A stretch of 64,000 nt of DNA from Gracilinanus agilis (lineage: Eukaryota), in assembly GCF_016433145.1 (NCBI RefSeq), contig NC_058133.1, positions 208,634,474 through 208,698,473 of the forward strand, in the 5' to 3' direction. Position numbers and translations under genes: made by a program. Below, piece by piece: positions 28,701 through 31,700 of the stretch. The notes beneath the pieces were generated by a model. That model saw only the letters and a list, made by a program, of their open reading frames with translations. It was not told where the DNA came from and did not search any database. How positions within the stretch are numbered: the stretch's first letter is position 1; the number at the start of each line of letters is the position of its first letter.

Positions 28701-31700
28701 GGATGGGTGACCAGTTTCCTTTCACATATCTTCTTATCCAAGTTAAATCACTTAACTGTTAGAACTAGGTGGGGAATTCGTACTCTGGCAGCAGTTGAAA
28801 AAAAGAGCAAAGAGGAAGAGACTAATTATTGTGGCATAAAACAATAACATCACCACCAGGGGCCCGTAGGTCCAGGGATCATTTAGTAGCTTTTTTCTGG
28901 AGGCATTTTGTAGTTCCAGGATAAAGTCTTCTGCTATAGATATCATTTCCCTGAAAGAGAAAGGATAGGTGGGTAAAGGATACTGTTGAGCAGAAAACAT
29001 TGCTTCTTTACCTCTCCTACTGTGCTTCCTTAATCATTTAGGTGTGCTGTTGACTTATTTTGGTCACTGGACATGAATGAAAATGACCTCTTCAGCAGAT
29101 AGCTAATGGCAGTTTCTTTTCTCTATAGAGAAAGGTGGAAACATTAATACTGCAAGCAGGGAATGTCTTAGAATAGACTCTCTCTCTGCATTTCTTCCAG
29201 CCCCACCTCCTTGTGTTTGTAGACATGAAGTGAACAGAAATGAAAATGGATGCCCAACCCTAACCCCTTCCTTGAGTTCTTCTCACCTAAGTGCCAGTGC
29301 CCTTCATCCCATATAATTCCCATCCCAATTGCCAGGTAATGGGTAGAATCTTTAGGGGAAGTGCCTGGGGACAAAGACTGAGTCAGGATTTTCAGAGGCA
29401 TCTTCCTGAGACTGAGGACTAAAAGGGGATTCCCAAGAGGTTTCTAGAGGGGCAAGGACCCTTGCCATGGAGCTCTTTGGGAGGGGAGCTGATAGCCACA
29501 GCATTGGGACTTGGAAAACTGGCTGATTTTGTGAATGAAAACGGAGTAATTGTCACCTCATTCTGTTGTCACTGTGTACTCTGTCCCCTCCACTAGAATT
29601 AGCTTTACAATATGGCAAATTGGAGTGGTTAGTCTAGACCCCAAGCCGCTGCATAAATAAGATAGCTGGAACTGTTCTAAGCCCTGAAGAGACAGAGGAC
29701 AAAAGCACTGGTATCCCTAGTCAGTGCTAGAAAGGAGAACCAGATACTTTTATAACTACTTCCTCCCCATTGTGATCAAGGCAACAAGGAAAGACAGGGC
29801 ATGGCTGCCTGGCAACAACTTCCAACCTTCCACATTTACCCCTCAGATTACATGCTGCCCTTTTATGACATCTCAATCATTCCCCTTCCATGGTTGTCCT
29901 TGATGTTCTTGTGTAGTTTTTTTTTTTAACCTTTTACTAAGAAGCGGTTCCAAGGCAGAAGAGTAGTAAGGGCTAGGCAATAGGGATTAAATGACTTGCC
30001 CAGGGTCATACTGCTAGGAAGTGTCTGAGACCAAATTTGAACCCAGGACCTCCAGTCTCCAAGTCTGACTTTATCAACTGAGCTACCTAGCTGGCCCCCT
30101 TCATGTTCATTTTCAACAAATCAGTCCTGTATGAAAATATTTGAGGTGAAGGGAGGACCCTGTATAGTAAGATTTTCCCCAGCTCACTTGCCCCTAGGGA
30201 TAGCCCAGGTCCTTACCTGATGATGGCTGTCTAGGTGATACAGTTGACTTGCTCTAGAGGACAGAAAAAGCCTAGGGCCAGTTCTACCCAACTCTTTGAA
30301 AATGCCTTTTAAGTGCTAGGGTGAATGATTAACAATAGCTCTGGCCAGTTCCTCCTGGTACTAGTTTCTGGGGGAGGAGAGGATTCTTATCACAACAGAA
30401 AGCTTATGCCTCATTTTTCTGGATGAGACTTGACTGGTTCCCAAGTTGCTTCTTGCTTTCTGCTAGGTCAGGGCCTCATAGATGAACCTTCTCTCAATGA
30501 GATGTGATAGAGAAAATAGAACTAGGTAGGTGACTCCTAGTGCTCGGTATAGGTACCTATTTAGGTTAGAATGTAGCCCTCAAGAACATGCTATGTTGAT
30601 CTCTTCACTAAACATTATCATTCTCTTGACCAGGATTAGCCCTTAATATGTTTGCAGCCTCTTGCTCTTTGTAGAGAGTAAGTCCTTACTGTCCTGCCCT
30701 TTGTACTCTGTGTCCATCTTTCCTTAAAAAATCATCCATTTACCTGCTTTCCTAGAATTCAGAGGGAAGCTGCTAGTTTCAGTGACTTGACAGGATGCTA
30801 CTATACTGGCTCAAACCAAATTCACCAACCTGGGTGCAATTGAAATGCACTTTCAGGGCCTTGTGAAATGTGTTAGCTAACCAGGGCAGTGGCATCCCAA
30901 AAAACCGAGTGAACAGTCTTCCTTTGCCTTGAGGGTAGAATAGGAGACATGTGCCTATACTCAGTAATTTTGTGTGGGTAGGACCTGCTTCTAGTATTTG
31001 GGAAAAGATGGTCAACAGCCCTACAAGTTAGGCTAGTTTTAGCAATAGAGCTTAATTTGACTACCCTGACAGGAAAGACAGTCCTGATACTGAGGAAAGA
31101 CTCTTGTGTGGCAGTATTTAGGGCAGCAGTAACATTAGAGAAAATCCAAGATTAGATCAGTTCAAAGCCTCCCCTGCCCCTGCCACCTTTCTCCTCCAGG
31201 TGTTTGTAGAAGATATCTGTCTATCTGGGCTGTTCTTTTCCTGAGAAGGAGACTGGCTGTCAGCCCCACCTTACCGTTTTGAGTCCCACCCATTCACATG
31301 GAGGTTATTTTGAGAAAGAGTTGGGAGAGAGAGAGAGAGAGAGAGAGAGAGAGAGAGAGAGAGAGAGAGAGAGAGAGAGAGAGAGAGAGAGAGAGAGAGA
31401 GTGAGNNNNNNNNNNNNNNNNNNNNNNNNNNNNNNNNNNNNNNNNNNNNNNNNNNNNNNNNNNNNNNNNNNNNNNNNNNNNNNNNNNNNNNNNNNNNNNN
31501 NNNNNNNNNNNNNNNNNNNNNNNNNNNNNNNNNNNNNNNNNNNNNNNNNNNNNNNNNNNNNNNNNNNNNNNNNNNNNNNNNNNNNNNNNNNNNNNNNNNN
31601 NNNNNNNNNNNNNNNNNNNNNNNNNNNNNNNNNNNNNNNNNNNNNNNNNNNNNNNNNNNNNNNNNNNNNNNNNNNNNNNNNNNNNNNNNNNNNNNNNNNN

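What the first reader, a model, noticed from the sequence alone, without database searches (positions are those of the whole stretch)
28752..28946. Marsupial SMIM6 looks intermediate between SMIM5 and eutherian endoregulin
It keeps the PW-x-x-G-x-L/TM core of endoregulin, a reported SERCA inhibitor. It lacks the acidic EEE tail recalled for human and mouse and instead has TM-adjacent Cys-Cys plus a Ser/Pro tail. Its N-terminal EDFILELQ echoes SMIM5 QNFLQEMH. This suggests SMIM6 arose by tandem duplication of a SMIM5-like gene, and that SERCA regulation was either gained later or is shared by the family.
Basis: inference. Interest (0 to 1): 0.7.

Follow-up and report, generated by a model that had tools for sequence, protein, structure and literature searches.

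The report
Opossum SMIM6 micropeptide beside SMIM5
This is a real 64-residue membrane micropeptide gene, the opossum counterpart of SMIM6 (endoregulin), sitting next to SMIM5; it keeps old family features, but the SMIM5-SMIM6 pair already existed in bony fish, so it is a conserved gene, not a transitional form.

Summary
The ORF is real. It lies at 28752-28946 on the minus strand and encodes 64 aa, with a splice acceptor 4 nt before the ATG.

It is 100% identical to residues 34-96 of a 219-aa NCBI model from Gracilinanus agilis named "SMIM5 isoform X1". No stand-alone marsupial SMIM6 entry was found.

By position it is SMIM6. It lies between SMIM5 and SAP30BP exon 1 on the same strand, among RecQ helicase exons of the opposite strand. 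Swordfish has the same order: SMIM5, an SMIM6-like gene, SAP30BP.

It passes the Pfam SMIM5_18_22 cutoff narrowly (29.6 against 29.3 bits). Five fish orthologues have that family as best hit, and nine hydrophobic control ORFs do not hit it.

Kinship with SMIM5 is therefore supported, but the duplication predates the fish-tetrapod split. The two genes keep different, separately conserved intron positions. BLASTP finds nothing between the opossum paralogues.

The Cys pair is ancestral (fish have CC or CCC). The neutral tail lies between a basic fish tail and the recalled acidic eutherian tail.

Three things were not tested: the reciprocal match to eutherian SMIM6, SERCA binding, and RNA evidence.

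Verdict: a new member of a known kind, of modest interest.

The parts
28752..28946 (-). SMIM6 (endoregulin) orthologue CDS: 64 codons plus the TAA stop (28752-28754), all in one exon
   Evidence: sequence, ORF; PF15831, 29.6 bits; 100% identical to residues 34-96 of XP_044532712.1
28947..28965 (-). Polypyrimidine tract and cag acceptor (AG at 28952-28951). The exon starts at 28950 with a 4-nt leader, GGAA, before the ATG
   Evidence: The Gnomon model P0001 joins here. The fish orthologue has a phase-2 intron about the same distance (25-26 codons) upstream of its PW motif
28881..28943 (-). N-terminal helix, residues 2-22, including EDFILELQ, an N14-A-S16 sequon and R17-K18-K19
   Evidence: AlphaFold2: helix 2-22, pLDDT about 73; match to SMIM5 QKFLLKLQ; charge counts
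28863..28880 (-). D-P-W-T-Y-G hinge motif, residues 23-28. P24, W25 and G28 are invariant in the opossum and five fish sequences
   Evidence: alignment A2; helix break at residue 23
28797..28865 (-). Transmembrane helix, about residues 28-50, with invariant V31, V32, F36, L43, F46, A47 and L48
   Evidence: (pLDDT 92-95 for residues 31-50)
28788..28793 (-). Juxtamembrane C52-C53, invariant in fish SMIM6-likes (CC or CCC) and matching the Cys cluster of SMIM5
   Evidence: (the Pfam profile ends in the Cys cluster)
28755..28787 (-). Uncharged Ser/Pro/Asn tail, residues 54-64
   Evidence: net charge 0, no K or R; fish tails have 5-8 K/R; low pLDDT, no helix from residue 58
28750..28757 (-). Weak donor A|GTTAAG lying over the stop codon. 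The 219-aa Gnomon model uses it to skip the stop
   Evidence: It fits the MAG|GTRAGT consensus poorly (reading of the sequence)
33572..33666 (-). First coding exon of the Gnomon model, lying in the SMIM5 3' region, with donor AG|GTAACC at 33572/33571
34911..35037 (-). SMIM5 coding exon 1 (42 codons plus 1 nt). The phase-1 intron lies inside the transmembrane segment
   Evidence: PF15831, E 3.4e-10; same intron site and phase in swordfish
33735..33844 (-). SMIM5 coding exon 2: the rest of the transmembrane segment, [10 protein letters not shown], a basic tail and the TGA stop
   Evidence: (PF15831 positions 38-56, E 0.008)
14997..15068 (-). SAP30BP first coding exon (N-terminus), downstream of SMIM6 on the same strand
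   Evidence: tblastx to the first exon of the swordfish HCNGP gene: 58% over 24 aa, E 0.002
19394..19924 (+). RecQ-type helicase exon (DEAH box) on the opposite strand, on the low-coordinate side of SMIM6
   Evidence: PF00270, E 1e-11
45097..45444 (+). RecQ zinc-binding exon of the same opposite-strand gene, beyond SMIM5
   Evidence: PF16124, E 2e-7

Best explanation
The ORF is the didelphid opossum orthologue of SMIM6 (endoregulin). It is a single-pass membrane micropeptide whose whole coding sequence lies in one exon. SMIM6 is an old, diverged member of the Cys-cluster SMIM5/18/22 family. It has sat next to SMIM5 and upstream of SAP30BP since at least the common ancestor of teleosts and mammals.

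The opossum protein has four parts: an N-terminal helix, a D-P-W-x-x-G hinge, a transmembrane helix of about 23 residues, and a Cys pair followed by a short uncharged tail.

Shown here: the ORF, its splice acceptor, its conservation, its family membership and its synteny.

Inferred: like eutherian endoregulin, it sits in the ER membrane with its N-terminus in the cytosol (three K/R residues before the helix, none after it). In that position its transmembrane helix would dock on SERCA and slow the pump. The Cys pair and N-terminal helix are retained ancestral family characters, not signs of a recent origin from SMIM5.
For: ORF and acceptor.

Identity: 100% to residues 34-96 of XP_044532712.1 from Gracilinanus agilis.

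Family membership:
- PF15831 at E 9e-7, 29.6 bits against a cutoff of 29.3, spanning ORF residues 3-54.
- The five fish orthologues all have PF15831 as best hit, E 4e-6 to 1e-4.
- None of nine hydrophobic control ORFs hits PF15831 at E up to 10.
- Atlas nearest clusters are SMIM22 (0.93) and SMIM6 (0.93); 16% of the SMIM6 cluster carries PF15831.

Synteny:
- Window, minus strand: SMIM5 (35037-33735), SMIM6 (28946-28752), SAP30BP exon 1 (15068-14997). RecQ exons lie on the plus strand at 19.4 and 45.1 kb.
- Swordfish: SMIM5 (PF15831), SMIM6-like, then an HCNGP gene, all on one strand.
- A second fish contig has SMIM5 exon 2 about 1.4 kb upstream of the SMIM6-like ORF.
- Human SAP30BP, RECQL5, SMIM6 and SMIM5 share one cis-eQTL SNP (PMC7449091).

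Conservation:
- Fifteen columns are invariant across opossum and fish.
- Fish-fish dN/dS is 0.26-0.45.
- A spliced cDNA-like fish contig carries the gene alone.

Structure: the model shows helices 2-22 and 24-57. The architecture fits human ELN (62 aa: cytoplasmic 1-25, transmembrane 26-48, luminal tail 49-62; PMC8396278).

Charge: the opossum has 3 K/R before the helix and none after it.
Against: - No eutherian SMIM6 sequence could be obtained by reference, so direct or reciprocal similarity to endoregulin was not measured.
- The lone-sequence search of 1.84 billion proteins found no eutherian SMIM6 at E below 1e-3.
- The Pfam score clears the cutoff by only 0.3 bits, and the fish scores are below it.
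- Thin profile-profile tests, run exon by exon, gave only 8-9% probability.
- BLASTP of the ORF against SMIM5 exon 1 found nothing.
- The only annotated model is a 219-aa protein that splices over the stop.
- Fish tails are strongly basic. This argues for the opposite membrane orientation in fish, so the SERCA role may not be ancestral.
- Nothing here tests SERCA binding.
Confidence: 0.72

Rival explanations
1. The family is ancestrally a palmitoylated small membrane protein with its N-terminus outside and its C-terminus in the cytosol, like SMIM5 and SMIM22, and has no link to SERCA. On this view the opossum protein still works in that older way, and SERCA inhibition is a later eutherian acquisition or an overexpression effect.
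For: - Fish orthologues have an acidic N-part (net -3 to -4).
- They carry CC or CCC followed by a tail with 5-8 K/R, which by the positive-inside rule places the tail and the cysteines in the cytosol.
- The opossum keeps the Cys pair.
- The nearest Atlas clusters for both opossum and fish are SMIM22.
- There is no similarity to phospholamban or sarcolipin in the PDB or Pfam.
Against: - The opossum has lost the basic tail and gained R-K-K just before the helix. This favours an N-terminus in the cytosol, as assumed for ELN (PMC8396278).
- Human ELN lowers SERCA Vmax in reconstituted membranes (PMC8396278).
- Charge rules are weak guides for very short proteins.
Confidence: 0.25
2. The 64-aa ORF is only the middle of a longer protein. 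That protein would be the 219-aa 'SMIM5 isoform X1' annotated by NCBI, made from a read-through SMIM5-SMIM6 transcript that splices past the stop.
For: XP_044532712.1 joins 33666-33572, the ORF exon, and exons near 28341-28210 and 27935-27693. Exon A has a good donor at 33572. Swordfish SMIM6 is also filed as an SMIM5 isoform.
Against: - The donor over the stop (A|GTTAAG) fits the consensus poorly.
- Neither the 33 N-terminal nor the 123 C-terminal extra residues found any relative.
- Fish orthologues end 16-24 residues after the Cys cluster.
- A fish cDNA-like contig carries the gene alone.
- The extra N-terminal exon lies in the SMIM5 3' untranslated region.
Confidence: 0.08
3. SMIM5 and SMIM6 are unrelated neighbours. 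On this view the Pfam hit and the motif echoes reflect the narrow sequence space of short helix-plus-cysteine membrane peptides.
For: - BLASTP finds nothing between the two opossum genes.
- hhalign probability is 8-9%.
- The local HMM cross-hits have E 0.3-2.4.
- The intron positions differ, and each is conserved separately.
- The Pfam margin is 0.3 bits.
Against: - PF15831 is the top family for all six SMIM6 sequences, 2-4 orders of magnitude better than the next family.
- Nine hydrophobic control ORFs never hit it.
- The SMIM5 exon-1 model ranks the SMIM6 ORF first among about 3,000 ORFs.
- Segment-preserving shuffles reach the real score in 12 of 500 trials (opossum against exon 1) and in 0-5 of 500 (four of five fish against exon 2).
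- The two genes have been adjacent, in the same orientation, since fish.
Confidence: 0.15

Closest known systems
SMIM6 / endoregulin (ELN), eutherian
   Same: The size and layout match: 64 aa here against 62 aa in human, with an N-terminal domain of about 25 residues, one transmembrane helix and a 14-residue tail (PMC8396278). The genomic neighbourhood also matches, with SMIM5, RECQL5 and SAP30BP nearby. An Atlas cluster of that name scores 0.93.
   Different: The opossum has a Cys pair after the helix and an uncharged Ser/Pro tail. The eutherian acidic tail and lack of the Cys pair are recalled, not tool-verified. Similarity to eutherian sequences was too low to surface in the big search. SERCA binding has been shown only for eutherian ELN.
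Pfam PF15831, SMIM5_18_22 (SMIM5, SMIM18, SMIM22/CASIMO1)
   Same: The ORF passes the gathering cutoff over nearly the whole profile (positions 5-53 of 56). It shares the N-terminal helix, a [D/E]-P residue pair at the start of the transmembrane helix, and a juxtamembrane Cys cluster. It lies adjacent to SMIM5.
   Different: The ORF has only two cysteines, where SMIM5 has seven. It has a PW-x-x-G hinge that SMIM5 lacks. It has no intron inside the transmembrane segment, whereas SMIM5 has a conserved phase-1 intron there. There is no pairwise BLASTP similarity to SMIM5.
Teleost 'SMIM5 isoform X3' proteins (e.g. Xiphias gladius, P0005)
   Same: They are positional orthologues, lying between SMIM5 and SAP30BP. 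They share 41-51% identity over the core, with the same E-D-[W/F], PW-x-x-G, F-A-L and CC positions. The exon layout is the same, with nearly the whole coding sequence in the last coding exon.
   Different: The fish start codon is in a separate 4-codon exon. The fish N-part is longer and more acidic, and the tail is Lys-rich.
Phospholamban / sarcolipin (classical regulins)
   Same: They are small single-helix ER membrane peptides. ELN is reported to act on SERCA as they do (PMC8396278).
   Different: No sequence relation was detected. No PLN or SLN chain appeared among PDB hits at E up to 10, and no Phospholamban or Sarcolipin Pfam family appeared at E up to 10. 'Regulin' is a functional grouping, not a shown homology.

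Membership tests
Pfam PF15831 SMIM5_18_22 | Score at or above the curated gathering cutoff (29.3 bits) | tested here: met
   29.6 bits, E 9.1e-7, ORF residues 3-54 against profile positions 5-53. The margin is only 0.3 bits. The fish orthologues score 23-27.4 bits, below the cutoff. Nine hydrophobic control ORFs give no hit.
Pfam PF15831 SMIM5_18_22 | Small protein with one transmembrane helix followed by a juxtamembrane Cys cluster | tested here: met
   The protein is 64 aa. AlphaFold2 gives a helix over residues 24-57 with pLDDT 92-95 in the core. C52-C53 aligns to the end of the profile, where the SMIM5 CSCCC cluster lies. The ORF has only two cysteines.
SMIM6 / endoregulin orthologue group | Position between SMIM5 and SAP30BP on the same strand, among exons of the opposite-strand RecQ helicase gene | tested here: met
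   for the window; for swordfish. The human neighbourhood is taken from PMC7449091 and from general knowledge of 17q25.1.
SMIM6 / endoregulin orthologue group | Reciprocal best sequence match to eutherian SMIM6 | not testable with these tools
   No eutherian SMIM6 was returned by any search. I did not type one from memory. The only indirect evidence is the Atlas cluster 'Small integral membrane protein 6' at 0.93, tied with SMIM22.
SMIM6 / endoregulin orthologue group | Layout of a cytoplasmic domain of about 25 aa, one transmembrane helix and a tail of about 14 aa, about 62 aa in all | tested here: met
   The ORF has residues 1-27, 28-50 and 51-64. Human ELN has 1-25, 26-48 and 49-62 (PMC8396278).
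Regulins (SERCA-binding micropeptides) | Binds SERCA and changes its Ca2+ affinity or Vmax | not testable with these tools
   This needs co-IP or FRET and ATPase or Ca2+-uptake assays. No complex-prediction tool was available.
Regulins (SERCA-binding micropeptides) | Sequence homology to phospholamban or sarcolipin | tested here: not met
   No PLN or SLN chain appeared in the PDB search at E up to 10, and no such Pfam family appeared at E up to 10.
Regulins (SERCA-binding micropeptides) | N-terminus in the cytosol, C-terminus in the lumen | tested here: inconclusive
   Charge counts favour a cytosolic N-terminus for the opossum (3 K/R before the helix, 0 after). They favour the opposite orientation for fish (1-2 before, 5-8 after). 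These are rule-of-thumb readings only.

The most novel reading that the evidence does not exclude
Endoregulin is not kin to phospholamban or sarcolipin. It is a diverged member of the Cys-cluster SMIM5/18/22 family. Its ancestral form, still seen in fish, has the N-terminus outside and a cytosolic, probably acylated, Cys cluster with a Lys-rich tail. On the way to mammals the charge bias flipped: the opossum has R-K-K before the helix and a neutral tail with the Cys pair kept, and eutherians have an acidic tail with the Cys pair lost. The membrane orientation would have flipped with it. Only then could the helix dock on SERCA in the phospholamban-like direction. The opossum would then capture the state just after the flip. 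SERCA inhibition would be a convergent mammalian gain, and SMIM5 and SMIM22 would not be expected to share it.
Probability: 0.15. Interest if true: 0.6.

Novelty: new member of a known kind. Interest (0 to 1): 0.35.

Why it matters
SMIM6/endoregulin is one of the few known non-muscle regulators of the SERCA calcium pump, and its origin is not discussed in the papers I could search. Three points here are useful.

First, the gene is much older than mammals and is paired with SMIM5 in fish.

Second, it belongs to the SMIM5/18/22 family by profile. This frames endoregulin as a recruit from another micropeptide family, not a relative of phospholamban.

Third, outside eutherians it is hidden in databases as "SMIM5 isoform" models (opossum XP_044532712.1, swordfish isoform X3). 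This explains why comparative work has missed it.

The shift in tail charge from fish to opossum to eutherian gives a concrete, cheap test: topology mapping plus SERCA assays on three natural peptides. That test would show when SERCA regulation arose. It is an annotation and evolution point, not a new mechanism.

Tried and rejected
1. Word-index searches. The 64-aa ORF found nothing. The 219-aa model restricted to residues 30-100 found only itself. No other marsupial or eutherian entry could be retrieved. The opossum-plus-fish alignment returned only fish.

2. The exhaustive search returned three hits: the protein's own model, a repetitive 923-aa protein that I discarded as a low-complexity match, and one fish protein.

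3. The PDB search gave only noise: GPR174 and PsbT at E of about 0.5-1.

4. Profile-profile comparison of the SMIM6 set with two-sequence SMIM5 exon sets gave 8-9% probability. The profiles are too thin to decide anything.

5. BLASTP of the ORF against SMIM5 exon 1 gave nothing.

7. Anderson et al. 2016 (PMC5696797) is not held. The papers I could read print no ELN sequence in their text.

8. I considered whether SMIM5 exon 1 could splice to the SMIM6 exon to make a hybrid protein. The frame gives Gly-Lys-stop, so I rejected this (reading).

9. The SMIM5 model was handled exon by exon, by reference. The joined protein was never built or searched.

10. The N run at 31406-31770 was left as it is.
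Full report
**The observation**

The minus strand of 28752-28946 carries an ATG-to-TAA ORF of 64 codons.
- EDFILELQ at residues 6-13.
- D-P-W-T-Y-G-P-L at residues 23-30.
- A hydrophobic run from G28 to F50.
- C52-C53.
- The tail [11 protein letters not shown], with no acidic residue.

A polypyrimidine tract and a cag acceptor end at 28951. The exon therefore begins at 28950, 4 nt before the ATG. The longer 82-aa ORF listed by the ORF finder starts in the intron. An AlphaFold2 model built on the six-sequence alignment gives a helix over residues 2-22, a break at D23/P24, a helix over residues 24-57 (pLDDT 92-95 for residues 31-50) and a loose tail.

**What the databases hold**

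The exhaustive search of 1.84 billion representative proteins with the ORF alone gave three hits:
- P0001, 219 aa, 100% identical over ORF residues 1-63.
- A repetitive 923-aa protein, which I discarded.
- P0003, a 90-aa fish protein, E 9e-4.

P0001 is XP_044532712.1, "small integral membrane protein 5 isoform X1" of Gracilinanus agilis. The window is therefore from this opossum or a very close relative.

Mapping P0001 back onto the window shows how the model was built:
- Its first exon is 33666-33572, which lies in the 3' untranslated part of SMIM5 and has a good donor.
- The second exon is the ORF exon.
- The stop is then skipped through a poor donor (A|GTTAAG at 28757/28756).
- The last two exons lie near 28341-28210 and 27935-27693.

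The added N- and C-terminal parts have no relatives anywhere. The word-index searches found no other marsupial or eutherian protein holding this ORF, in the length ranges 35-112 aa or 120-383 aa. In the collections at hand, marsupial SMIM6 is thus visible only inside a mislabelled SMIM5 model.

**Neighbourhood**

SMIM5 lies about 6 kb upstream on the same strand.
- Exon 1 runs from the ATG at 35037 to 34911 and ends one base into an Ala codon inside the transmembrane segment.
- Exon 2 is 33844-33735 and encodes the rest of the helix, [10 protein letters not shown] and a basic tail.
- I handled these exons separately by reference and never joined them.
- Exon 1 alone hits PF15831 at E 3.4e-10. 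Exon 2 alone hits profile positions 38-56 at E 0.008.

Other genes in the window:
- On the plus strand, a DEAH-box helicase exon (19394-19924) and a RecQ zinc-binding exon (45097-45444) bracket the pair.
- A MyTH4 exon lies at 55318-55929 on the minus strand.
- The N-terminus of SAP30BP is at 15068-14997 on the minus strand. It was found by tblastx with the first exon of the swordfish HCNGP gene (58% over 24 aa).

The order along the minus strand is therefore SMIM5, SMIM6, SAP30BP, lying among RecQ helicase exons of the other strand. This fits the human 17q25.1 neighbourhood as I know it, and a paper reports one cis-eQTL SNP for SAP30BP, RECQL5, SMIM6 and SMIM5 (PMC7449091).

**Fish relatives and the age of the pair**

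An alignment of the ORF with P0003 pulled out four more fish proteins. One of them is swordfish "SMIM5 isoform X3" (P0005).
- In the swordfish genome the order on one strand is a PF15831 gene (SMIM5), the P0005 gene, then an HCNGP (SAP30BP) gene.
- A second fish contig (L001) has SMIM5 exon 2 about 1.4 kb upstream of its SMIM6-like ORF.
- A third contig (L003) is cDNA-like: the coding sequence is contiguous across the intron site. It carries only the SMIM6-like gene, with 281 nt of leader.

Opossum and fish share 15 invariant columns: S3, E6, D7, P24, W25, G28, V31, V32, F36, L43, F46, A47, L48, C52 and C53. Identity is 41-51% over the core. Fish-fish dN/dS is 0.26-0.45.

The gene layout is also shared. 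In swordfish a 4-codon first exon is followed by one exon holding the rest. Its phase-2 intron lies 25-26 codons before the PW motif, where the opossum acceptor sits.

The SMIM5/SMIM6 tandem pair is therefore at least as old as the teleost-tetrapod ancestor.

**Is SMIM6 kin to SMIM5?**

Evidence for:
- The ORF passes the Pfam SMIM5_18_22 cutoff (29.6 against 29.3 bits, E 9e-7) over nearly the whole profile.
- The five fish proteins all have that family as best hit (E 4e-6 to 1e-4, below the cutoff). The next families are 2-4 orders of magnitude weaker.
- As a control for hydrophobic bias, I scanned nine of the most hydrophobic non-SMIM ORFs from the same loci. None hit PF15831 at E up to 10.
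- The Atlas places the ORF next to SMIM22 and SMIM6 clusters (0.93 each). Only 16% of the SMIM6 cluster carries PF15831. The fish protein lands on SMIM22 clusters.

My own thin tests are weaker:
- BLASTP of the ORF against SMIM5 exon 1 finds nothing.
- hhalign gives 8-9% probability.
- Local HMMs of the SMIM5 exons rank the SMIM6 ORFs first to third among about 3,000 ORFs, but at E 0.3-2.4.
- Segment-preserving shuffles reach the real score in 12 of 500 trials for the opossum against exon 1, and in 0-5 of 500 for four of five fish against exon 2.

EDFILELQ best matches SMIM5 QKFLLKLQ (4 of 8 identical; 2 of 949 background windows do as well). The match to QNFLQEMH is weaker, at 2 of 8 identical.

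Evidence that weighs against a simple DNA-level tandem duplication: SMIM5 has a phase-1 intron in the same Ala codon inside the helix in both opossum and swordfish. SMIM6 has no intron there in either species.

I rate common ancestry at about 0.7-0.8.

**"Intermediate" or ancestral?**

On sequence the ORF is plainly on the SMIM6 side. The Cys pair is shared with the fish SMIM6-likes (CC or CCC) and with SMIM5, so it is an old family character.

The tail is the one feature that does look graded. Fish tails carry 5-8 K/R (net +2 to +6). The opossum tail is uncharged. The opossum also has R-K-K just before the helix, where fish have one or two basic residues.

By the positive-inside rule this predicts a cytosolic C-terminus in fish and a cytosolic N-terminus in the opossum. 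The second orientation is the one assumed for ELN (PMC8396278). This is inference only.

**Function**

Human ELN lowers SERCA Vmax in reconstituted membranes and is reported to act on SERCA2b and SERCA3a (PMC8396278). Nothing here tests SERCA binding by the opossum peptide.

There is no sequence link to phospholamban or sarcolipin. No paper in the library connects SMIM5 with SERCA or discusses SMIM5-SMIM6 kinship.

**Limits**

- No eutherian SMIM6 could be fetched by reference. I did not type one, so the reciprocal-best-match test was left out.
I sent no DNA of that stretch to DNA, genome or paper searches afterwards.
- The N run at 31406-31770 was not touched.

**Verdict**

This is a genuine, conserved SMIM6 orthologue that retains ancestral family features. 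The family link to SMIM5 is supported, and the "transitional form" reading is not. It is a new member of a known kind, of modest interest.

Noticed in passing
window 33572-33666 (-) and 28750-28757 (-); L002 10001-10505: NCBI models file SMIM6 as an SMIM5 isoform in both the opossum (XP_044532712.1, 219 aa) and swordfish (isoform X3). The opossum model starts in the SMIM5 3' UTR, at a good donor (33572). This hints at read-through SMIM5-SMIM6 transcripts, or at gene merging by the annotation pipeline.
   Followed up: partly
window 31271-31900: The assembly gap (N run 31406-31770) between SMIM5 and SMIM6 is flanked by long (GA)n and (GT)n microsatellites. I left the gap as it is.
   Followed up: no
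window 14000-16000: This is a G+C-rich stretch (0.49 against about 0.37 nearby). It holds the SAP30BP first coding exon on the minus strand (15068-14997) and probably the start of the opposite-strand RecQ helicase gene, which would make it a likely bidirectional promoter. An acidic ORF at 14088-14336 (-) looks like SAP30BP exon 2; that reading is from memory only, and Pfam gave no hit.
   Followed up: partly
window 55318-55929 (-): A MyTH4-domain exon (PF00784, E 3e-8), probably a MYO15B-like myosin gene upstream of SMIM5 on the same strand.
   Followed up: no
window 28899-28907 (-), residues 14-16: An N-A-S glycosylation sequon lies 14 residues before the transmembrane helix. It would be used only if the N-terminus faced the lumen, so it is a handy natural reporter for the topology question.
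   Followed up: no
window 1397-1639 (+), 8395-8712 (+), 35985-36542 (-): ORF fragments with LINE-1 ORF2-like strings (e.g. ...CWRGCGK...HCWWSCELIQPF), i.e. decayed retrotransposon copies in the introns.
   Followed up: no
L003 1-1002: This fish contig is cDNA-like and carries the SMIM6-like gene alone. Its coding sequence runs straight across the intron site, with 281 nt of leader and AATAAA signals. This is evidence that in fish the gene has its own spliced mRNA.
   Followed up: partly
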